A DNA stretch of 64,000 nt from Bigelowiella natans CCMP2755 (taxonomy: Eukaryota > Protista > Cercozoa). The notes under the pieces were generated by a model, which searched no databases, was not told the DNA's origin, and was given only the letters and a program-made list of their open reading frames with translations. The stretch covers positions 1 through 64,000 of the forward strand of contig ADNK01003130.1 of the NCBI GenBank assembly GCA_000320545.1, in the 5' to 3' direction. A program made the translations under genes and the position numbers. How positions within the stretch are numbered: position 1 is the first letter of the stretch; every line of letters begins with the position of its first letter. Shown piece after piece: positions 2,799-60,010 of this stretch.

Positions 2799-3105
2799 GT
2801 GTTTCGAATCTGATTCCAGGAGGGATTTTCTAGGGTAGAAACTAGGCCAACTCGTGCTTGCGACATGAGGCTGGCAGGAAGAACAAGAGGTACGGGTCAG
2901 CTCGGCAAGCTGGTAAATTTATGCCCCGCAGATATCTGATCAAACTTCTCGCGCATTTGGCCTCCCATGGCGCGGTTGGCCAGAATGAATATGAGTCTTT
3001 TTTGTAGGGGATTTTATATCAGCGACAAGACGGAATGTCCATATCAGCCGTAAACTACCTATGAAAATTTATTCTTGCTGAGTGTAGTAATCGCGCCCTG
3101 GAAGA
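2799..3105. promoter_or_regulatory. Putative bidirectional promoter between phosphatase (-) and PAT1 (+)
   Basis: About 300 bp separate the divergent start codons; inferred from geometry only. Confidence 0.4.
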
Positions 3106-4459
3106 ATGGCGTCGGACTCGGCCTGGAACGGCCGCACGGAAGACGACGCAGATGACCAAGACCTCAATGACCTCACGTTTGGCGCGGGAGGAGGAGATGG
3201 AGACGATGGCGACTTTGGTTAGTTTGAGCCCGCGAACATGCGTGGCATCGAAGTTGTTTTTGCGAGACACTTGGATCCTCGCCTACCTTAAGAATTTTCT
3301 TCCTATTTTGCGCCGAACCGCAGACTTCACTGGGAACTCACAGGCTGCAGCTGACCTAATGAAGCAAGCTAAAATAGAGGTTCTCCTATGCTAAATTTTG
3401 GAATGGAGGGGGGAAAGTGCAGTGACGTTTTAGCTAGTGTTGTGAATCGATTGTGCGAACACACCCCCCACTTAGGTGAGAAGGACAAAGCAGTCGAAGG
3501 AGACTAAGGATAAAAAGCAGGACGATGGAATGAGAATCATGAGTTCTGTTCTGAATATTTTAGGTAAGCAAATGTTGAGCGAATCTAAGATGTGGTGTGT
3601 ATGTGCGTGTGTGTGTTGTGCGCGTGTGTCGTTAGAGATAAGTGAAGTAACCTTTCCCCCCCACACATATAATGTTCAGACGACGACGACGACGACGACG
3701 ATGACGATGACGATGGCGCGCCTGCCCCGGGGGACAGATCTGCAATAAAAGATGTAAGATCAAATATTCAAACATACGAGTCACAAAACCTTTATTTCAT
3801 GATCCGCCTCCTCGATTCCTTCCATCATCGCTCCAAGACAGCCCCCTTCTTTCATTCAGCGAGGAGGAGGAGGAGGAAGGGGGGAGACAATTTGAACTTA
3901 TCTCCTAATCTTCAACAATAATCACTATTTCAGGCCCGGTCGTCATCTTCCTCCTCCTCGTGGAACAAGGGAGGCGGGTTTGGCATTGGTGGTGGAGGGT
4001 TTGGAGACGGGTTGTTTCCTTTTGGATCCGGCCCCTTTGGAAGAAACAACAACCCTCCTCCTGCTTCCTCCAACACCATTGGAGGTGTGTTCGGGGGAAG
4101 TGTCAGGAGTAACCGTGGCCATAATAACAATATGGCGTCGTCTTCCTCCACCTCACCCCCCTCCCAGAATCATCGGAGGCAGCAGCAACAGCAGCTGCCA
4201 CCTCCAGGCGTCGTCAGGGAGATCAAAGCAGGAGACCTGGAAAGGCAGCTCGCTAGTCAATTGCAGATATCATCAAAGGGAGGAGGCAAGCCGAGAGGGC
4301 CTGCGGTAGGAGGAGGAGGTATGCTTATTCGTTATTTCCATCCACTACATCCATCCATTTATGAGGTTGATACATCATCGTCGCTGCTGCCCAGAGTGAC
4401 AACAACTACTCCCTAACCCCCTCCCCCCCATTTTCTCCCTCCCTCCCTCTCTCTCTCTT

Positions 4460-4499
<40 letters not shown>

Positions 4500-6058
4500 A
4501 TCTCCATACGGAGTGTTCCAGAGAATTGATGGGTTTGCCTCCTGTCTTTTTTGATGTCTTACTATTCAGCGACGACGCCCTTCGGCGCACCGCCGGGTGC
4601 GCGGGCTATACCCCCCCCCGGATCGCCCACCAAGAACAACAATGTGTGGCAAAACCGCAGGGGCCAACCCAAGAATAATAATGTCAGCAGCGGTCGCCAA
4701 AACGTTGGCCCCCCCTCTCCCGCCCCCCCGCAGTATCCAATGCATCAGCAGCACCTGCAGCACCCACCCCCCCCCCACATGATGGGGCCTGGTGGTTTCA
4801 TCTACCCTCCTGGAGCCCCCCCCCCTGGAGGACGTGCGCCTCCTCCAGGAGCCATCCACGGAAGAGGAGCAGCCCTCCCCCCAGGAGCGCGCGTTCCGCC
4901 GCCCCAATACCCCGCTGGAAACCTCTACCCTTTCCCCCCCCAAGGGAGAGGGATGCACCCTCCGCAGCCGCAGCAGCAGCAGCAGCAGCAGCAGGTACGG
5001 GGGCCTAAGTTCACGGGGGAAGGAGGGCCAGCTCCTCGTGGAAACAACAAGTACCCTCCGACCGGAGGACCGCAGCAGCAGCAGCGCCCTCATCATCAAC
5101 AGGGGCAGCAGCAGCAGCCATATGGAACTAGTCAGAGCTCACGCCCCAACTACAACCGGGTAAGCCCGAATTTCATGTCCATGGAGGGAGAGGGAGGGGG
5201 GGGGTTAAGGGTTAGCATTCCCGTGTATTGGTCGATAATTGGAGAGTGCTTAGTATCAACATCATCGTCATCACCTTCACATGGTATCTCTGACCCGCGC
5301 TGTTTGTGATTGCGTCGTTCTATGTAATGGTGTACGTTTCTGTGTTGTGCGTACGTATGTGCCGCCCAGGTCTACCTCCCCCTCCCCCGGAAGAACTTTA
5401 AGATGATGAGCAAACCCGAGATTGCCAATGTCATCAAATGGCAGCTCACGCAACTGCGAGGCAGCAGTGCTATGGAAGATGACTTCTACTTCCAAGTAAG
5501 CGGAGTAGTGATATCAGCGAGTAGGGAGGAGGGGGGGGAGGAGGATGATAATGGTATCTCTCATGCTCGTTAATGCACGCGCGCACACAAACACGAAAGC
5601 ACATTGTGCTCATATATTCATTTATGTCGATGAAGTAGTTATATGCGACAGGCTGCTCTCAAACAGACACACAGTCAAACCACAACAGTAGCAATAGACT
5701 ATCATAATGGTTGCTCTATACCCCCCCCCCCCCCTTATGTCTCTAAGGTGTGGCAGTCCAGGCAAGGGAAAACTGCGAGGCCTTCGACTCAGCTGGAGAA
5801 GTTTCAATGGCGCACGAACCCACACCAGTAAGGAGGAAGAATTTGATGTATTGTTTGCCATAAATAGTAGTAGTAGTTGCAGCAGTAGCAGCAGTATTGC
5901 AGTAGGAATGTGTGTCATCTTTGAATCGACGGTTCGCTTCATCAAAGATACCCCCCCCCCTCTCTGTGTTACCTCTCCCCCCTCTCCTCATATTCGCACA
6001 AATGGCTGGATCTTAATGACATAATGTGTCAATATACAAACATACATTTATACATGTG

Positions 6059-19510: not shown

Positions 19511-20496
19511 TCTTAACCCCAACTCCTACTTCAGCAACGATAACGACGACAAAAACCACACCATTGCTGAGGGCCTCTTGCTGCAGAATCACTAAGGACA
19601 TTCGACAACTTAACCTCTCGGAAGATATCCCATCTCTACGTGGTGCCGACGCGGCGATATTCCTTAGCAAGCACCTCTGCGGCCCTGCCCTGGACATGTG
19701 CCTCGTCCACATCGTAGGGATGAGCGGGGGGCGGGAAGAAGGCCAGGGCGACGACAACGGAAAGAAAATTTTTGGCGATGGTAATGATGAAAATAACTCC
19801 TCCTTTGCTGCTGATCCTTCATATCTAAGAGCAGAAGCAGCATCAGTGTGTTGTTCGGAAATAAGAAAGACTGGCCGTACGACATCAATTAGCATTGCCA
19901 CATGCTGCCATCACCTACTCGACTCCAGCAACGTAGCAAATCCTGCATTCTTTCGCCAAGATGCTTTGGCACTGAGCGAAGAGGAGATTGCTCTGCTGGC
20001 TCATGCGTCCTCATGGGCAAGTATGTGTGTCGTGCAGCATTTCACTCCCCACGCCTTTTTTTTGGGGGGTCATGCACGTAAGCAAAACAACATGCTATGG
20101 ATGGGTTCGAATCTGTGTCATCTTTCTCTTACGTTTGAAAATTTTTCTTCCTAAATCAATCATCAATTACAGCTGAAGTTACCTCCTTAGCGCATGATTT
20201 TGCTCAGATCACTCTTGTTGTTGCCATTTTTCTCTCACAAAACGTGTGTGACAGGCATTGCTCCTGGGAAATGCAACACTGGTGACAGTGGAAAATTTGG
20301 GATTTCAGTTCAGGAGAAAAGAGATTTTGGAAGGCGATGCAAGCTCTTGTTCGACATCTCAAGAGCTGATTTTCTTCGTCAGCACGGATTTGAAGTGCAG
20401 CTGCTGCGCTACACGAAGGAGACAACGGACAACACACTGCTGTTGGCCACATGCCATCCTTCTTCTGCCATGAAAATTGACCGCAAATCAGAGTGA
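17354..20496 (+). CDS. TRM13: tRNA:m(4)X modification enzyme TRM13 homolog (2'-O-methyltransferase)
   Basis: N-terminal CCCH and CHHC-like zinc fingers; HRVQESAIL; FVELG|SGKGDLS SAM motif; SKHLCGPALD; IATCCHH; GRRCKLLFDISRADFL...LLRY. Confidence 0.9.
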
Positions 20497-20519
20497 TCTT
20501 CTGCCACTGGTGCTCTATT

Positions 20520-21500
20520 TGCCTCAGTCATGGTTCGGCACACTGCGCCTGCATGGTGATGGTGGATGTCTGATGCACAAGCACACTAGGCATGACGTTC
20601 AATTTGCATCACACACATGGTGCCTATACATTGGATTGTGCAGCAGCACAACGCACAAACGAACAGTCGCAGCACAACTAGACAACACCCGCTAGCCCGC
20701 CGCCGGACACGCAGCTCTAGAGCTGGTGTTGATCGATGCCAGCGACGTCTAGACGTGTTGCACATTGTCACACCTGCACGCACTGGCATCGTGATCAGCG
20801 ACTGCCCCCAAGCGCTCGACATGACCAACACGCATCATTGGCAATTTGGCAATTCCAGAATGGAGCAACGTTTGGACACGGACACACAACGTGATGAGCT
20901 TGCATTCTGCAACACATGGACACAATGTTGGTCCAGCCTGTTGCATGGTGATGGGCCCAGTTTTGCCTAGTGCTGCTCACAAGTGCGTGCTGGCATGAAA
21001 CCAGGAGCAGCATGCAAGTTCACAGTTGTGCACTGCACTGCGTGCATGGAGCACACTTTTGTGGAACTCTGGCCACGTGCAAGCTGGCAAGTGACTCAGC
21101 GCTTGCCCAGTGCGCATCGAACAGAGTGGCGGTGCATCGCAGTCCCCCACATCGCACATCGCACACATCGCACGGACGTCCGATCGTGTGCATCCGCCCT
21201 AGTTAGCCTAGCTCAGTGCGACGAAACCAAAACAGTCACTGCTCCAGCGGAGAAGGGCACTCGAGAAGTTCAAGGTGAAGGATTGCTGTGGTGATTTGAG
21301 TGCCACTGGCACCCTCTAATCAGGTCACCGAGGACACTGCTGCCATGATCGCTGATCACTGCTGGCGGACAGTGTGAGGACCAGCAGAAACACGTGCGAG
21401 ACGGGTTCCATGGGCAGCAGACTTCAGTGAGTGGATCAGGCACAAGCTTCGTTTCTTGTGAAGATGAAGGAATCCGTTGAATTGGGTCCTTTTTCTTGAA
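20520..21500. other. TpA-depleted degenerate intergenic zone
   Basis: From 20630 to 21527 I count 9 TA dinucleotides: 7 in CTAG, 1 in TTAG, 1 in CTAA. Confidence 0.85.
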
Positions 21501-21502
21501 AA

Positions 21503-22193
21503 ATGTTTGAAGATGACCCTTTTCTGGGTAAAAAGCCCATCATCAAAAATGCCTCAAATCTCGATGATCTGGCAGTTGGTAAAAAAAAAAAGGTCCACTA
21601 AAGAAAGGATGTTCGAACGAGTTGTCCACAAGCTTTGCGCCCACTATGGACAACAGCTCCATCATCGATATTGTAATTGGCTTGTTTTCATCCAAGTATT
21701 TGCATGCTGAGCTGAGCACCTGTGCAGATATTCAATGCTGCGGACAAGAACCACGATGGCTCACTTGACGAGAGGGTAAAATTGAGACTGATCCTAAGGG
21801 CGCGCCTAACTCAGATCGCAGCCACAAAAATCGTGACTTTCTTTTGGGTTTTGCCCACACATGTTTCGCAGAATCAAATATGAGAATCTGATTTTCCTTG
21901 CTGATATTGCATATGTCAGGAGCTAAAGATATTTCTTCGCCAAGAAGTACATTTCACTGAGGAGGAGGTCAAGCAAGTTTTCGCAGCTTTCGACGACAAC
22001 AAGGATGGAAAGGTTGCAGGACCCATAACGCACTCACGCACCACGCTAGAAACATATTATACACACATTGTGCACACACCTTGTTTCAATAGATCAACAA
22101 AGAGGAATTCACGATGCTGCTTCAACAGCGGGAGACCTTCAAAATGGAAGGGGTAGATATTTTTGGTTTCATATTGCTATACATTAGCCATGA
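21503..22193 (+). CDS. Small two-EF-hand calcium-binding protein (ends uncertain)
   Basis: Spliced exons give IFNAADKNHDGSLDER|ELKIFL...VFAAFDDNKDGK|INKEEF, two canonical EF loops. Confidence 0.7.
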
Positions 22194-29635: not shown

Positions 29636-29769
29636 TCATGTGGGCCGGTAAGAGAAACGGAGGAGTAGTAGCTCCAGTGATAAATATTAGGAGCGGGACG
29701 CACAGAATGATAAAGATAGTAGGTGATGGAACGATGCTGTTGGTGATAATGACAACAACAAGAAATTGT

Positions 29770-30590
29770 GAAGCTAGCATCAGATGGACCCTGTCAATGA
29801 TGTCTAGATGTGACGTGAGAGACCGTGGCGCTGGATCATTTTCATGGTGTGCAGTGCATCAAAACCCCACAATTTTCTCACAATGAACGCAAAATCAAGA
29901 TGCCATCCACAACACAAAGTCACATGACCTGGAAATGCAACTGCACTGAAGTGCAGAATGTGCTGACACGCGATCACTGCGCGCATTGCGATGCCAGCCT
30001 TGGCTGAGCATTCATCGTGTTGCACGTGGCAATTGAGCGGTGACACAATGGTTCAACTTGTGTGCCTGTCAGAGGTCTGTGCGTGTGCAAGCGAAACGTT
30101 TGAGCTCGCAGAATTGACACCACATTCACTTGCCTGGCTGTTATCACTCGCGGATGTCTAGATGTGTGGCTCGCACAGTCGCACAGTTCATGCTTGCACA
30201 GTGAGGACAGTGAGGGGTAAAACAAGAATTGCTTGCTCAGCTCATGCTCATCATCCAGAAACGCATCGCAACCAACTTTGCATTCATCCCTAAGCACAAA
30301 ACAGAGGCACATGCTGGAACCAAAAAGCCATGAAAATTCCTCAACAAAACAGCCCCTGCCGTTACACGTTCCCTTTTCTCGTCACTAGTCGCAATCAACA
30401 TGCATCTGGCGTTTGCAAACGTGCGACATCATTTTCTGTTCACGAAGAGCCGGATTGTTGCTCTGTTTGGTGCCTGGAGCTGGAGCGTGCGACAAAGGAC
30501 TAGCCGCTGAAAGCACCAAAAATTGCCTCATTCATTCGAAACCTTGGTGCGGTGTTTTGAGCTCTAGAATTGAAGAGCAGCACAACTTTA
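29770..30590. other. TpA-depleted zone, probably overlapping 5' exons of the lectin gene
   Basis: No TA from ~29807 to ~30140; several remaining TAs are in CTAG. Confidence 0.8.
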
Positions 30591-51059: not shown

Positions 51060-52140
51060 TCTCCTGCATTTGCTTCGACCTGCACATGCTACTTGAATTG
51101 CGCAGCAACAAGTGCACGAATGAGCTCTGAAAATGTGATGAAAGAGGAGCGCGCAGTCTAGTAATTGCAGCAGTCTTGACATGACGTGAAGCTAGACAGC
51201 TCTAGCAGAGCTTGATTGACAGCTAATGCTAGGCAGCATGCAAGCATGCACAGCAGCACCTCCAGCGCCTGCGCTAGCACGCCCTTCCTTCTCCAGTGCT
51301 TCTAGCCTTGGCAGCTTGCATTGTGTTGCATTGCCATGCTAGCATGCCAAAATTGCAGCGCGCATGCGTGCTCTTGCTAGCTTGGTGTGCCACCGTTCTA
51401 GCGTTCTGTCATGTTCTAGCGTTGCACTCATCCAGACGTGTCCCTGACGAGTGCCAGAGTGTCAAGTTGCTTGATCGGTTGTGGCCGACATCACCATCTA
51501 GCCATCGATCGCCACGTCTCAGGCATCATCGCAGCCTGTCCACGCGTCAGCAGCGTGTTGTCTGTGCACCCTCAGGTCCTGTTGAACGTCAAGTTGTGAT
51601 CAACCAACGTTTCAGTGCATCAGTGTTTCGCTCTCGCGCTCCTTGGTTGTCTCGCTCCGACCGAAAAAGGCACGTGTGGACGAGCACGTGCCAGCGTGGT
51701 CGTTTCAGCTGCGCCGTCATTGGAATGAACAATGAACAATGAACAATGAACAATGAACAAAGCGTTGATCAAATCCACATGCGCCAGAACCACATGGGAG
51801 ACAGGAATCGTTTCGTCCACTCAACAACTCATCGTTCTGTGGCTTGCTTGCGCACGTGTCCATCAAGTGTTCGTGGAAAGTGCGAGCTTCTGTTCCCAAT
51901 GTTCAAGGCCACTCTTCACACTGCAGTGCACTGCGACGCAGCCACGCTCGGGGTGTTGTGCAAATGAAACCAGCCATGAAGACGCGAGGTCTGAATGAAT
52001 GAAGATGAACAATGGAAGAACGATGATGAACGCAAAAAAAAAAAAGACTGAAAACAACAAACAAAAGTCCTTCGAATTCAAGGCAAGAATTCATCCCGAA
52101 AACATCCCATCACCATCAACATCAAACATTCGGAGGAACT
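51060..52140. other. TpA-depleted degenerate zone downstream of the 5S gene
   Basis: No TA from 51501 to 52139; 51170-51500 has 11 TAs, 10 in CTAG and 1 in CTAA. Confidence 0.85.
51724..51758. repeat. (AATGAAC)5 tandem repeat
   Basis: Five perfect 7-mers. Confidence 0.95.
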
Positions 52141-52156
52141 AAGATGTTGGGAATTG

Positions 52157-52167
52157 AAAAAAAAAAA
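52157..52167 (-). terminator. RNA polymerase III terminator (T11) of the 5S gene
   Basis: A11 on the + strand, 4 nt beyond the 5S 3' end. Confidence 0.8.
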
Positions 52168-52171
52168 GGTT

Positions 52172-52290
52172 GGATACAACAACGCCGTGTTCCCGCGTGG
52201 TCCCCCACCGCAGTACTAACGAGTCCCAACGACGCTTAACTTCCGAGTTCGGCAGGGATCGGGTGTATTAGTCGTGGTATGGTCGTATCC
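52172..52290 (-). rRNA. 5S ribosomal RNA (single dispersed copy)
   Basis: Minus strand reads GGATACGACCATACCAC...CCCGATCCC..CCGAACTCGGAAGTTAAGC...TTAGTACT..GGTGGGGGACCAC..GGGAA..GTTGTATCC; 119 nt with paired termini. Confidence 0.97.
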
Positions 52291-56593: not shown

Positions 56594-57029
56594 ATTAATT
56601 GAGAGGAGACGAGAGCGACAGCATGGGGACGCAACACTTAATCTTGACATGCACATACAACAGGGAAAGACCTGCAACTGGACGAGGAGCACAGGGAATC
56701 TTCTAAAGTTGTTTTGGGGCAGGATCCATACCAAGAACGCATTAATGTATTAAGGAGTAGTGTCGCCAAGCACGTAGATAAGCTATGGGCGACTCCTGCC
56801 ATACAGGCCACATTTGAATTAAAGGACCACTTCCAGAAACGTTTAAACGAAAATGCAAATCATTTCCTCTCTCAAGCCTCCAAGATTGGGGAGGATAATT
56901 ATATTCCAAGCGTTGAAGATATCATGCGATGCCGGCAGCGGACTATTGGAAATACAGACAACAAGTACAATAAAATAAAACCTGATGCGCTCTCTTCTCC
57001 CTCCCCCCGCCCCCCTCCCCCCTCTCTCT

Positions 57030-57068
<39 letters not shown>

Positions 57069-57092
57069 CGCGATTGTACACATATATCAACA

Positions 57093-57127
<35 letters not shown>

Positions 57128-57740
57128 TGTGTGGTGTAAGCAGTTAATGCATATATTGAATTCGGTACTTTTGTTTCTCCTCTTTTATCGCTCTTGCTGA
57201 ACCTATACTCTCATCAGATTCTCTTACGAGGGTATAGACTTTACTGTTTATGATCTGGGCGGGCAGTGGGATGAGCGCAGACACTGGCACCAGTTCATCG
57301 CGCGAGCATCAACTATCGTTTTTATGGTCAATATGGCCGGGTATGACGAGGCGCTTCATGAAGACCGCAAGATCAATTGCATGGAAGATGCATCCACCCT
57401 TTTCGCACGGCTCAGTGGCGCATCCATTTATAGGGATATCCCCATCGTAGTGTTCTTTAACAAAATGGACGTCTTCAGAAGTAAAATCAAGCGAATCCCC
57501 CTCACACAGTGCCCGTTGTTTGAAGATTTTGATGGCGCGGAAGGCGACGTTGACGCTGCTGCGAAGAATATTCAAACACATTTCGACTCGTGCAAGTTTG
57601 CATCACAGGGTAAATTTAGACGGTCGGTGAAATATCACTTTCTTTGCGCATTAGATATTGAGGCAGTGAAGACGATTTTCAACTCGGTTATGACTCATGT
57701 GCTCAAGCAGCAATTATTGGCGTCTGGTTTATCCCTATAG
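56230..57740 (+). CDS. Heterotrimeric G-protein alpha subunit, divergent
   Basis: MGVCTS lipidation motif; G1 GPAKSGKST; G2 RQRTIG; G3 DLGGQ; G4 FFNKMD; G5 CALD. Confidence 0.93.
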
Positions 57741-58129
57741 GTTATAATAATAGTTTCACCGCTGGAACATATGAGAAAGCTGCAATGATAAATTTAAAAC
57801 TCTGAGTAAAAAATTCAAAAAATGGATTGAGCTGGTACATGTGACACATTGACTGCTACGTTTGCACAGCTTGTGGCCATGTTGTGAGGGCATCGCAGGC
57901 GAGAAATGTTCGCGTATGTGTGCATGCGCGTTGGCAGACATGGTGTGCGCTGCTAGATAGCCGTACGTGAGCGCTTATGAACGATTAATTCCAAATGCTC
58001 TGCAGAATGCGAATTCATTTGATGCTTACTTGTGCGTGCCTTGCCCCACCATTGCTGCTGTCGTGACTCATGAATGAGAATTGTGTTGCTTCTACTGCAG
58101 CAATCAGCTGCTAATGAGACCATGAAACA

Positions 58130-60010
58130 GATCCTGCGAAACTGCACTGACGAAGATGACGCAGTCAATCGAAGATGGAGTGCATGATGAAAAGCTTGCA
58201 GCCATGACATTGTTCACATGTGCCTCCAAAGCTCATCCAAAAGCCTGGCATTCCGGCATGATGCGCAAGTCATGTGAAAAATGTGGAACACGAGGCTCCC
58301 TGCCATCATGGGGACGACTGGCTCAGAAATCGCACTGCCAGATTCAAATTTGGCAGTGCTGTTTCTGAACACATGAATCTGGAGAGCGGAGTCCCAGAAG
58401 GATCGTCTCTCAGTTGCTTCCTGTTCACAACTTGTTGCGATGTTCATGAACAAACAAAAAGTGCAGATTTCCAAACGTGCTGTGACGATGTCACTCCATG
58501 CAAATCATTTCCCCCAAAGCGATGGGGGAAAATGCCAGACGATGTCCAGGCCGACCTGAACAAAATGACGGACTGGTGCATGAAATGGCGGATGCGATTC
58601 AATGGGGACAAGAGTGGATGCCTCATCACAGACAAAAGAAACAAAGCCCGCCAACACCAATCTTGTTGGAACATCTCTCTGAGTCTCCAAGGCAAAGTGA
58701 AAAGGGTCGACAGCGGCAGATGTCTCGGACCAATTTTCACAATCGACAACAAACTGACCTTTGAAAAACATGCTCTTGCTTCTCACCTGAGATTGCAAAA
58801 AAAGCGAAGGTTTTTGTCAAGGTTGTGTTGTTCCAGATTCCTCATGTCGCTGAATGTCAGATTGAAATTTTGCAAATCATGGTTCATTGCATCAAGCAGA
58901 TGCGCAGCTCCAATGTGGAGATCACGAAAAAACATGCGAATCAAACAGATGGATTCCATGGAATCCCAAACCCTGAAAAGAGTGTTGGGATCACCTGGAT
59001 CTGTCTCCAACGACGTTCCCCACGTCCTCACTGGCACATTGCCACCCCGACACCAAACAAAAGTGCAGTGTGCCAAATTGTGGTTGCGCACCAATGCATG
59101 AATCGATGCAGGCAACAGTCATGAAATGCATGAGAGAATGAATGACTGGAGCAGTTGTGGCTTCATCATTGAAAATCGAAAAATCCCAGGTGGCACATCG
59201 TGGATTGACGCATCCACAAAAACGTGGAACAAAGTGTCTCTGTTTCGCCGGCTCAAATCGATCACTGACGATTTGTTGCATGACGAGCTTCCCACTGTTT
59301 TGACGACAACAGAAGCGCTCAAAAAAGATCTGAAAAAACATCACAAAGTGATGAAATCATCTGCTTTCACCAAATTCGAGGAGGAATGGTCCAATGATTC
59401 ACTGAGAGCTGTGCATCTCAAGAATCTTGGATTCCTTCTGTCATCTTCGATCACCGGCATCAAACTGAAACTTCCAAGTGTCGCTACATCATGGATGCGC
59501 GCCATCTGTGGAGTCGGCAATCTTGGAAAATTCATGTTTTCACGTGGACAATGTGCAGAGACAGATGCCACATGCGATGCATGTGGCATCCTGAAGGACA
59601 TGGATCATCTCCTGCAATGTCCAACATGTGGTCAACAACAAATCAGATTGCGCAATCAAATGAGCGCAATCATGAATCGCAACGACGAGATGAACCGGCT
59701 AACAAAGGCTGAAAAAGATTCAAGAACTGTTGCGCGCAGTGCGCGACAACATCGGTCGCACGAGGACGCTTTCAAATGCATGAAGCACGTGGTGGCAGAA
59801 ACCAACAGACACAACATTAGCGCTGTAGCCGCTGCATTGCACAGCTACATCAGGATGACCATTGAAAAAATTTAATTGTTCATCACATCCGTCTCACATA
59901 CATGGGTGCTCATCGAAGGTGCCAATACCAAATGAGCCTGCGCTGTGCTCATCATATGTTCCATGCATATAGAGGCATCTGCATTCGTTGATCAGTCAAA
60001 CAAACAATGC
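58130..60010 (+). mobile_element. 5'-truncated, hypermutated non-LTR retrotransposon (LINE): RT, C-terminal CCHC-like knuckle and 3' UTR
   Basis: SKAHPKAWH (~KAYDxVWH), DWLRNRT, GVPEGSSLS, CCDD (~YxDD), WCMKWRMRFN, RCLG (~KYLG), CDACG..DMDHLLQCP; frameshift at ~58310 and an in-frame TGA at 59099. Confidence 0.9.

What the first reader, a model, noticed from the sequence alone, without database searches (positions are those of the whole stretch)
58114..59484. Candidate TpA-targeted A:T->G:C hypermutation system ('reverse RIP') acting on a LINE
Seen: a manual scan finds no TA dinucleotide in about 1.37 kb, where very roughly 80-100 would be expected from base composition. The 275-aa RT ORF has no Tyr. 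Established: LINE RTs carry YxDD, KAYD/KAFD and KYLG motifs, and fungal RIP runs the other way (CpA->TpA). Seen: these motifs read CCDD, KAHP and RCLG, and Cys/His/Met/Thr are in excess, as expected from TAY->TGY/CAY and ATA->ATG/ACA. CpG sites persist. Inference: a genome-defence process mutates TpA on either strand. Candidate mechanisms are a TadA/ADAT-like DNA adenine deaminase, or TET/JBP-type thymine oxidation giving T->C. I cannot establish from this window whether this has been described before.
Basis: partly seen in the sequence, partly recalled or inferred. Interest (0 to 1): 0.97.

Follow-up and report, generated by a model that had tools for sequence, protein, structure and literature searches.

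The report
TA-erased LINE copy in Bigelowiella
A dead jumping-gene (LINE) copy in the alga Bigelowiella natans has had nearly every TA rewritten to TG or CA; this is a real, striking DNA hypermutation, but a 2026 preprint already showed it experimentally in this species, so this window is one more example with some added mechanistic detail.

Summary
Window 58114-59484 holds no TA, against about 95 expected, and lies inside a 5'-truncated LINE copy (58121-59899). Intact copies of the same LINE elsewhere in the genome are 99.7-100% alike, carry 203 TA and read YCDD and KAYP. At least 14 other copies have each independently turned the same TA sites into TG or CA, in a mosaic with no strand runs. 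So this is TpA-targeted A:T->G:C hypermutation, not a natively TA-free element.

The genome is Bigelowiella natans. Mettrop et al. (bioRxiv 10.64898/2026.01.13.699255) already showed this process de novo in mutation-accumulation lines, in integrated virus DNA and in low-TpA coding sequences with RT domains. This scan has also met it before on other DNA of this genome.

Added here:
- Copies are bimodal, either native or saturated.
- A flanking C (5') or G (3') slows both strands.
- One full-length copy is mutated in two patches of about 0.9 and 1.4 kb. One of these runs on into unique flanking DNA, so the target is chromosomal DNA, not a cDNA intermediate.

The enzyme remains unknown. Adenine deamination is the leading guess, and the ADAT2 analogy is weak. 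Reads could not be checked.

The parts
58121..59899 (+). 5'-truncated, old copy of a 4.97-kb APE+RT LINE. It matches native element positions 3189-4965 at 86% identity. 52 of the 56 native TA sites are no longer TA: 27 are TG, 18 are CA, 1 is CG, and the rest are other changes.
58114..59484 (.). Stretch with no TA. TG o/e is 1.90, CA o/e 1.39, and CpG is kept.
58274..59101 (+). ORF2 remnant covering the C-terminal half of RT. It is 80% identical to native ORF2 residues 647-906. Every native Tyr is now Cys or His; YCDD has become CCDD.
59126..59875 (+). ORF2 C-terminal remnant with a Cys/His-rich region, 87% identical to native residues 916-1164. This part is already TA-poor in intact copies.
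59485..59873 (+). Six surviving TA at 59485, 59700, 59818, 59826, 59846 and 59873. Five sit in GCTA/TAGC contexts, which mutate slowly. At 59700 and 59873 the modern master element itself now reads TG.
20176..21625 (.). Separate TA-depleted island: 13 TA against about 78 expected, TG and CA o/e 1.6-1.7. It is single-copy in the genome.
29726..30200 (.). Separate TA-depleted island: 5 TA against 31 expected. It is single-copy.
51401..52200 (.). Separate TA-depleted island: 4 TA against 50 expected. It is single-copy apart from a (GAACAAT)n array.

Best explanation
The window holds an old, 5'-truncated copy of a still-active LINE of Bigelowiella natans. After integration, a chromosomal hypermutation process converted its TpA dinucleotides to TpG or CpA. 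At each TA one of the two adenines (top or bottom strand) is changed to G. The site is then no longer a target, so CpG double hits are rare. Strand choice is independent from site to site. The process runs to saturation in patches of about 1-2 kb. It is slowed when the TA is preceded by C or followed by G. This is the same process that Mettrop et al. (2026) observed de novo in mutation-accumulation lines. Shown: the footprint, its independence among copies, its context rule, and its action on chromosomal DNA. Inferred: that the chemistry is adenine deamination to inosine by an as yet unidentified zinc deaminase that reads the duplex TpA step, and that it serves as defence against mobile and viral DNA.
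For: (1) Sixteen native copies have 50-58 TA in the 3' 1.78 kb, while 14 depleted copies have 3-15. At 56 native TA sites each depleted copy shows its own mix of TG and CA.
(2) Young depleted copies differ from native almost only at TpA: 68 of 78 substitutions in C1193 and 60 of 68 in C1853.
(3) Across copies the products are TG 494, CA 372 and CG 11. The runs test gives 426 runs against 430.7 expected, so there is no strand coordination.
(4) Intact elements have ORF1 of 480 aa and ORF2 of 1164 aa with APE and RT domains, 203 TA and YCDD.
(5) Context effect. In saturated copies 2.4% of DTAH sites are kept against 12.8% of CTAH/DTAG sites (p=4e-8). In the partly mutated C1193 copy, DTAH is 54 mutated to 11 kept and half-sites are 11 to 16 (p=1e-4). 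In my tally of the preprint's de novo mutations, G after the edited A is at 0.51 of expectation.
(6) One tract in C1193 runs without a break from about 1.06 kb of flank (unique DNA plus one 430-bp repeat) into the first roughly 830 bp of the LINE.
(7) A B. natans JGI protein is encoded at 100% identity in this genome.
(8) The preprint shows 230 of 231 de novo mutations in two viral inserts to be A>G or T>C, and says all fall on TpA. Its Table S2, as I read it, lists four of the T>C at ATG or ATT.
(9) From the preprint's rates, about 3e5 generations would remove 97% of TpA while adding only about 1e-4 other substitutions per site. That fits near-pure TpA spectra in young copies.
Against: No reads could be examined, so the sequence rests on the assembly. 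The chemistry cannot be read from sequence: A>G on one strand equals T>C on the other. The 5' edges of tracts in truncated copies are very sharp, with the nearest flanking TA 6-33 bp away. Editing of a retrotransposition intermediate would also produce that. What selects some copies while at least 13 near-identical full-length copies stay untouched is unknown. The last roughly 700 bp of the element escapes in most copies, and position and context are confounded there.
Confidence: 0.9

Rival explanations
1. Editing happens during retrotransposition. A UpA/TpA-specific deaminase edits the LINE RNA (giving TG) and the first-strand cDNA (giving CA), so each new copy is born mutated. This would resemble APOBEC3 restriction.
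For: Tracts start within 6-33 bp of the 5' truncation point, and flanks have normal TA density. Copies are either native or nearly saturated. TG on the sense strand is somewhat in excess, 494 to 372.
Against: The full-length C1193 copy has two separate partly mutated patches and an untouched 2-kb middle. Its 5' patch continues about 1.06 kb into flanking DNA, which includes unique sequence. Single-copy islands in the window carry the same footprint. The preprint saw de novo mutations in integrated, single-copy DNA-virus inserts. Near-97% saturation with exactly one hit per site is more easily reached over many generations.
Confidence: 0.07
2. The chemistry acts on thymine rather than adenine. 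Examples would be oxidation or other modification of T in TpA followed by mispairing or error-prone repair, giving T>C.
For: Sequence alone cannot tell A>G from T>C at a palindromic TpA.
Against: No Tet_JBP domain was found in the genome, although that search had no positive control. I know of no thymine modification that gives clean T>C at near 100% yield; this rests on my own knowledge and was not tested.
Confidence: 0.12
3. ADAR-like hyperediting of LINE double-stranded RNA, fixed by reverse transcription.
For: An A_deamin (ADAR/ADAT1-type) domain gene exists at C2414. ADARs disfavour G and favour U before the edited A (preprint discussion).
Against: A retro-copied sense RNA would carry only A>G. 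Here TG and CA are interleaved at random within single copies. The need for T is essentially absolute. Non-transcribed, single-copy DNA mutates de novo.
Confidence: 0.02
4. A natively TA-free LINE subfamily kept so by selection, or an assembly or base-calling artefact.
For: The 3' 726 bp of intact copies is itself TA-poor, with 5 TA against about 49 expected.
Against: The TG/CA choice differs from copy to copy at the same sites; median pairwise agreement is 0.59. Intact copies carry TA at these sites. The copy is broken by frame changes and is 10.6% diverged at other sites. The preprint's Illumina resequencing found only 1.5e-4 SNPs per nt against the reference outside the viral region. That would not hold if the TA-free islands were artefacts.
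Confidence: 0.02

Closest known systems
TpA hypermutation of integrated viral DNA in Bigelowiella natans (Mettrop et al., bioRxiv 10.64898/2026.01.13.699255)
   Same: Same species, same TpA->TpG/CpA signature on both strands, and the same local clustering. The preprint also found RT and endonuclease-RT Pfam domains enriched among low-TpA coding sequences, and 124 TA-depleted genomic clusters.
   Different: The preprint's experimental targets were an NCLDV insert and a virophage insert. Repeats with excess read depth were excluded from its callable genome. Its main text has no LINE family analysis and no wider sequence-context analysis. This report adds copy-by-copy evidence, the C/G flank effect, the lack of strand coordination and the patch structure.
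Fungal repeat-induced point mutation (RIP)
   Same: Dinucleotide-specific transition hypermutation that inactivates transposon copies and leaves a skewed dinucleotide footprint.
   Different: RIP runs C>T, mainly at CpA, creating TpA. It is triggered by sequence duplication before meiosis. Here the direction is the opposite, at least 13 near-identical full-length copies stay unmutated, and single-copy DNA is hit (preprint).
TadA/ADAT2-type adenosine deaminases, including TadA-derived adenine base editors and amphioxus BjADAT2
   Same: Their natural target, A34 of tRNA, is preceded by U33. A TadA-derived editor (ABE8e A48E) prefers YAC on DNA (PMC13109818). Six CDA-fold deaminase loci exist in this genome. 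TACG contexts attract the edit in strand-choice contests (0.76 at site level, p=0.014 uncorrected).
   Different: These enzymes act on loops or single strands. BjADAT2's DNA context for A was GAA, not TA, and it preferred hairpins (PMC10354150). Here a flanking C:G pair slows both strands about equally (68 to 49), and edits are not strand-coordinated. That points to reading of the duplex. In the preprint's de novo data, C after the A is barely enriched (1.14-fold).
APOBEC3 and ADAR hypermutation of retroelements in animals
   Same: Deaminase-type defence that riddles retroelement copies with transitions in a preferred dinucleotide context.
   Different: Those systems act on cDNA or RNA intermediates and give strand-asymmetric, coordinated runs: G>A for APOBEC3, A>G for ADAR. 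Here both strands are hit at random within one copy, and chromosomal DNA is the substrate.

Membership tests
B. natans TpA hypermutation (Mettrop et al. 2026) | Substitutions are almost only A>G and T>C | tested here: met
   In young copies 68 of 78 (C1193) and 60 of 68 (C1853) substitutions are A>G or T>C at TpA. The window copy is older and also carries ordinary decay.
B. natans TpA hypermutation (Mettrop et al. 2026) | Mutations confined to TpA, giving TpG or CpA depending on strand | tested here: met
   At 203 native TA sites the outcomes are TG 494, CA 372 and CG 11. In saturated copies 97% of DTAH sites are lost.
B. natans TpA hypermutation (Mettrop et al. 2026) | Same organism | tested here: met
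   EukProt/JGI B. natans protein 68657 (P0007) is encoded at 100% identity over 173 of 173 aa in G000:C3316. Genome size is 91.4 Mb.
B. natans TpA hypermutation (Mettrop et al. 2026) | Ongoing de novo mutation at this locus in culture | not testable with these tools
   Needs reads from mutation-accumulation lines.
Fungal RIP | C>T transitions, mainly at CpA, creating TpA | tested here: not met
   The direction is the reverse: TpA is destroyed and CpA/TpG are created.
Fungal RIP | Triggered by sequence duplication | tested here: not met
   At least 13 full-length copies at 99.7-100% identity are unmutated. Single-copy islands are mutated.
ADAR hyperediting fixed by retrotransposition | A>G on the RNA sense strand only | tested here: not met
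   TG and CA are interleaved at random within each copy; runs z = -0.34.
TadA/ADAT2-like DNA adenine deamination | A candidate HxE-PCxxC (CDA-fold) deaminase is present | tested here: inconclusive
   Six PF00383/PF14437 loci and one A_deamin locus were found. This is an ordinary eukaryotic complement.
TadA/ADAT2-like DNA adenine deamination | Anticodon-loop-like context (U/T before A, C then G after it) | tested here: inconclusive
   T before A is absolute. TACG wins 74% of strand contests (94 to 33) but only reaches p=0.014 at site level, uncorrected. In de novo data C after A is 1.14-fold.
TadA/ADAT2-like DNA adenine deamination | Acts on single-stranded or hairpin DNA (expected: strand-coordinated clusters, same-strand context only) | tested here: not met
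   There is no strand coordination. At CTAH/DTAG sites both strands are slowed and are edited 68 to 49.

The most novel reading that the evidence does not exclude
The agent would be a natural adenine deaminase that works on double-stranded DNA and reads the duplex TpA step. Both adenines are equally available, and both are slowed by a flanking C:G pair. It would be directed to chromosomal patches of about 1-2 kb that can cross transposon borders, rather than being housekeeping ADAT2 moonlighting on single strands as the preprint proposes. No natural double-stranded-DNA adenine deaminase is known to me.
Probability: 0.25. Interest if true: 0.85.

Novelty: already known. Interest (0 to 1): 0.4.

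Why it matters
The phenomenon is remarkable: a eukaryote that erases one dinucleotide from invading DNA, in the opposite direction to RIP. Credit for it belongs to the 2026 preprint, and this scan has already met it on other pieces of this genome.

This locus and its family add usable constraints for finding the enzyme:
- An absolute need for T before the A.
- A twofold or greater slowing by C before or G after the TA, felt by both strands.
- No strand runs.
- Patchy tracts on chromosomal DNA.
- A switch-like choice between untouched and saturated copies.

The partly mutated full-length copy at C1193:59302-64260 is a natural place to look for ongoing mutation and for the chromatin or small-RNA mark that sets tract borders. 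If the enzyme proves to be a TpA-specific adenine deaminase acting on duplex DNA, it would interest base-editing work, for example editing of organelle DNA without a guide-opened strand.

Tried and rejected
- Second LINE family: I tried to fetch 20 more copies of a second LINE family to replicate the context analysis. The three short loci already held for that family overlap by only about 590 bp and gave too little.
- Single-strand motif TAH (G after the A blocks only that strand): rejected. CTAH sites give both TG (59) and CA (45).
- CTAG immunity: in the window's islands CTAG density equals background (2.07 against 2.15 per kb). However, 4 of the 9 island CTAG are 8-bp NNNN-CTAG-NNNN insertion scars (earlier notes). 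They may postdate the hypermutation, so the islands do not prove immunity. Within the LINE, 3 of 3 CTAG are kept in the partly mutated C1193 tract, while 3 of 5 are TG or CA in an old copy.
- TACG (tRNA-Arg anticodon-like) preference: suggestive only and not replicated. The preprint's table gives only three-base contexts.
- Tet_JBP search: no hit, but nothing rang in the controls either, so it says little.
- Deaminase census: no expansion was seen.
- Protein search with native ORF2: one close family (68% identity), seen in Tara Oceans and in B. natans, and nothing else informative.

Full report
**1. The observation**

TA occurs at window 58112 and not again until 59485. This 1373-bp gap is the longest in the window. 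Base composition predicts about 95 TA. At the window's own TA frequency the chance of such a gap is about 2e-30 per start site. Within 58114-59484, TG is at 1.90 and CA at 1.39 of expectation, and CpG stays at 0.69. The 275-aa ORF (58274-59101) has no Tyr.

**2. What the sequence is**

A search of the window's own genome (91.4 Mb, 3736 contigs) with 58000-59900 found more than 50 matches. The family's intact form is a 4.97-kb non-LTR retrotransposon; an example is L031:694-5659 on the minus strand. It has ORF1 of 480 aa and ORF2 of 1164 aa, the latter carrying an APE-type endonuclease and an RT domain. About 13 full-length copies are 99.7-100% identical.

The window copy spans 58121-59899 and corresponds to element positions 3189-4965. 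It is therefore 5'-truncated. It is 86% identical to the intact form, has small indels, and has about 10.6% non-TpA divergence, so it is old.

Protein alignment shows native YCDD and KAYP where the window has CCDD and KAHP. All nine Tyr in the aligned stretch are replaced by Cys or His.

**3. Hypermutation, not a TA-free lineage**

In the 3' 1.78 kb, 16 copies have 50-58 TA and 14 copies have 3-15. At the 56 TA sites of the native copies, each depleted copy carries its own mixture of TG and CA, and CG is rare. Median pairwise agreement in TG/CA choice is 0.59, so these are largely independent events.

Native copies differ from one another by 0-0.8%. Even among these few differences, 26 of 72 are A>G or T>C at TpA.

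Two young depleted copies are almost pure cases. C1193 has 68 of 78 substitutions at TpA, and C1853 has 60 of 68. Over the whole element (203 TA sites) the outcomes are TG 494, CA 372 and CG 11. A runs test shows no strand coordination, with 426 runs against 430.7 expected.

For these counts I first used a per-column majority of native copies inside a script, which was not printed. I then used a natural intact copy (L031) as the reference.

**4. Organism and prior description**

Notes from earlier agents of this scan on other pieces of this genome named Bigelowiella natans and a 2026 preprint. I checked both claims.

- A LINE protein cluster contains the EukProt/JGI B. natans model 68657. That 173-aa protein is encoded at 100% identity in G000:C3316.
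- The preprint is Mettrop et al., bioRxiv 10.64898/2026.01.13.699255. It reports mutation-accumulation lines in which 230 of 231 de novo mutations in an integrated NCLDV region and a virophage region are A>G or T>C. Its text says all of these fall on TpA, though four rows of its Table S2 differ (section 10).
- It also reports 324 low-TpA coding sequences enriched for RT, endonuclease-RT and DDE domains, and 124 TA-depleted genomic clusters.
- It proposes an ADAT2 homologue as the agent.
- Model 68657 appears in one of its supplementary gene lists.

So the phenomenon is already known. The preprint's main text has no LINE family comparison and no analysis of context beyond the dinucleotide. Its callable genome excluded positions with more than twice the average read depth.

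**5. Context rule**

In saturated copies, TA flanked by neither a 5' C nor a 3' G (DTAH) is kept in 2.4% of cases. Sites with one such flank (CTAH or DTAG) are kept in 12.8% (p=4e-8). In the partly mutated C1193 copy, DTAH is 54 mutated to 11 kept, half-sites are 11 to 16 (p=1e-4), and CTAG is 0 to 3.

I tallied the three-base contexts in the preprint's Table S2. The base after the edited A is T 76, A 71, C 56 and G 23. G is at 0.51 of the expectation taken from this window's background (chi-square p=6e-4). The caveat is that this baseline comes from a different region of the genome.

At half-sites both strands are edited, 68 to 49 in favour of the strand without the G. The flank therefore slows the whole site, not just one strand. 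This argues for recognition of the duplex.

CTAG looks untouched in the window's islands. That evidence is confounded by a separate phenomenon that I verified in passing: 8-bp NNNN-CTAG-NNNN insertions.

TACG attracts the edit, winning 94 of 127 strand contests. The site-level mean is 0.76 with p=0.014, uncorrected. This resembles the U33-A34-C35-G36 loop that TadA reads.

**6. Where it acts**

In truncated copies the flanks have normal TA density right up to the 5' truncation point. The nearest TA is 9 bp upstream of the window copy, and 6-33 bp away in three other copies.

The last roughly 700 bp of the element keeps its five TA in 75% of cases. These all sit in CTA or TAG contexts, so position and context cannot be separated there. 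In the window copy a favourable TTAA at 59873 also survives, which hints that the tract stops short of the 3' end.

The intact element's own 3' 726 bp is TA-poor, with 5 TA against about 49 expected. At two sites the old window copy still has TA where the modern master has TG. The master lineage has therefore been touched too.

The full-length C1193 copy has two partly mutated patches, at element positions 0-870 and 2890-4260, and an untouched middle where 99 of 101 sites are kept. Its 5' patch continues for about 1.06 kb into the flank. That flank is unique DNA plus one 430-bp repeat.

Three further TA-depleted islands in the window are single-copy.

Together with the preprint's single-copy viral targets, this shows a process acting on chromosomal DNA in patches. 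It is not editing of a retrotransposition intermediate, and it is not repeat-induced in the RIP sense.

**7. Rates**

From the preprint's figures, one TpA mutates at about 1.1e-5 per generation in an active region. About 3e5 generations would remove 97% of TpA while adding only about 1e-4 other substitutions per site. This is my own arithmetic on the preprint's numbers. It explains why young copies can be saturated yet otherwise nearly identical to the master, and it makes the native-or-saturated bimodality look like a switch.

**8. Mechanism**

I commit to adenine deamination to inosine on chromosomal DNA by a zinc deaminase, at about 0.5 for the chemistry. The footprint itself is certain; the chemistry is inferred.

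The genome has six CDA-fold loci and one A_deamin locus, with no expansion. No Tet_JBP hit was found, in a search without a positive control.

The ADAT2 analogy is weaker than the preprint suggests:
- The one ADAT2 shown to edit DNA preferred GAA for adenine and hairpin substrates (PMC10354150).
- A TadA-derived editor does prefer YAC (PMC13109818).
- The lack of strand runs and the two-strand flank effect fit a duplex-reading enzyme better than a single-strand one.

**9. Limits**

The case against an artefact rests on two points. The TG/CA mosaics are independent across many copies. The preprint found a low SNP density between its Illumina data and the reference.

This prevented replication in a second family and prevented inspection of the deaminase genes.

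**10. Items noticed in the preprint's data**

Its Table S2 lists four T>C de novo mutations at ATG or ATT, although the text says all are on TpA. It also shows 19 mutations at CTA against 4 at TAG (binomial p=0.003), which I cannot explain.

Noticed in passing
window-wide, e.g. 20749, 29804, 30158, 51498: CTAG flanked by an exact 4-bp direct duplication (NNNN-CTAG-NNNN) occurs 20 times in the window: 4 of 9 CTAG in TA-depleted islands and 16 of 128 elsewhere, against about 0.5 expected by chance. Earlier agents of this scan described these as insertion scars. They confound any claim that CTAG is immune to the hypermutation.
   Followed up: partly
window 20176-21625, 29726-30200, 51401-52200: Three more TA-depleted, TG/CA-enriched islands. 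They have no other copy in the genome at DNA level, apart from a (GAACAAT)n array at about 51724-51760. So the footprint is not limited to recognisable repeats.
   Followed up: partly
L039 (G000:C1193:57500-66000), locus 742-2632 and element positions 2890-4260: A full-length LINE copy, 98.4% identical to native, caught half-way through the process. It has two partly mutated patches and an untouched 2-kb middle. One patch runs on into unique flanking DNA and a 430-bp repeat that has at least 40 copies.
   Followed up: yes
native element L031:694-1420 (minus strand), i.e. element positions 4240-4966; window 59700 and 59873: The 3' 726 bp of intact, active copies is itself TA-poor, with 5 TA against about 49 expected. 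At two sites the old window copy keeps TA where the modern master has TG. The master lineage seems to have survived hypermutation of its own 3' end.
   Followed up: partly
preprint 10.64898/2026.01.13.699255, Table S2: Four de novo T>C mutations are listed at ATG or ATT, not TpA, although the text says all fall on TpA. De novo hits at CTA (19) far outnumber those at TAG (4), although the two are the same event on opposite strands.
   Followed up: no
window 56714-57740: ORFs that look from their residues like exons of a G-protein alpha subunit (my reading; no family search was run on them) end about 380 bp upstream of the LINE copy. A (CA)n/(TA)n microsatellite lies at about 57050-57140.
   Followed up: no
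P0001 cluster; L036-L038: A second LINE family (ORF2 68% identical) has over 150 matches in this genome. Near-identical full-length members occur in Tara Oceans surface samples and other public assemblies. Its B. natans gene model 68657 appears in a supplementary gene list of the preprint.
   Followed up: partly
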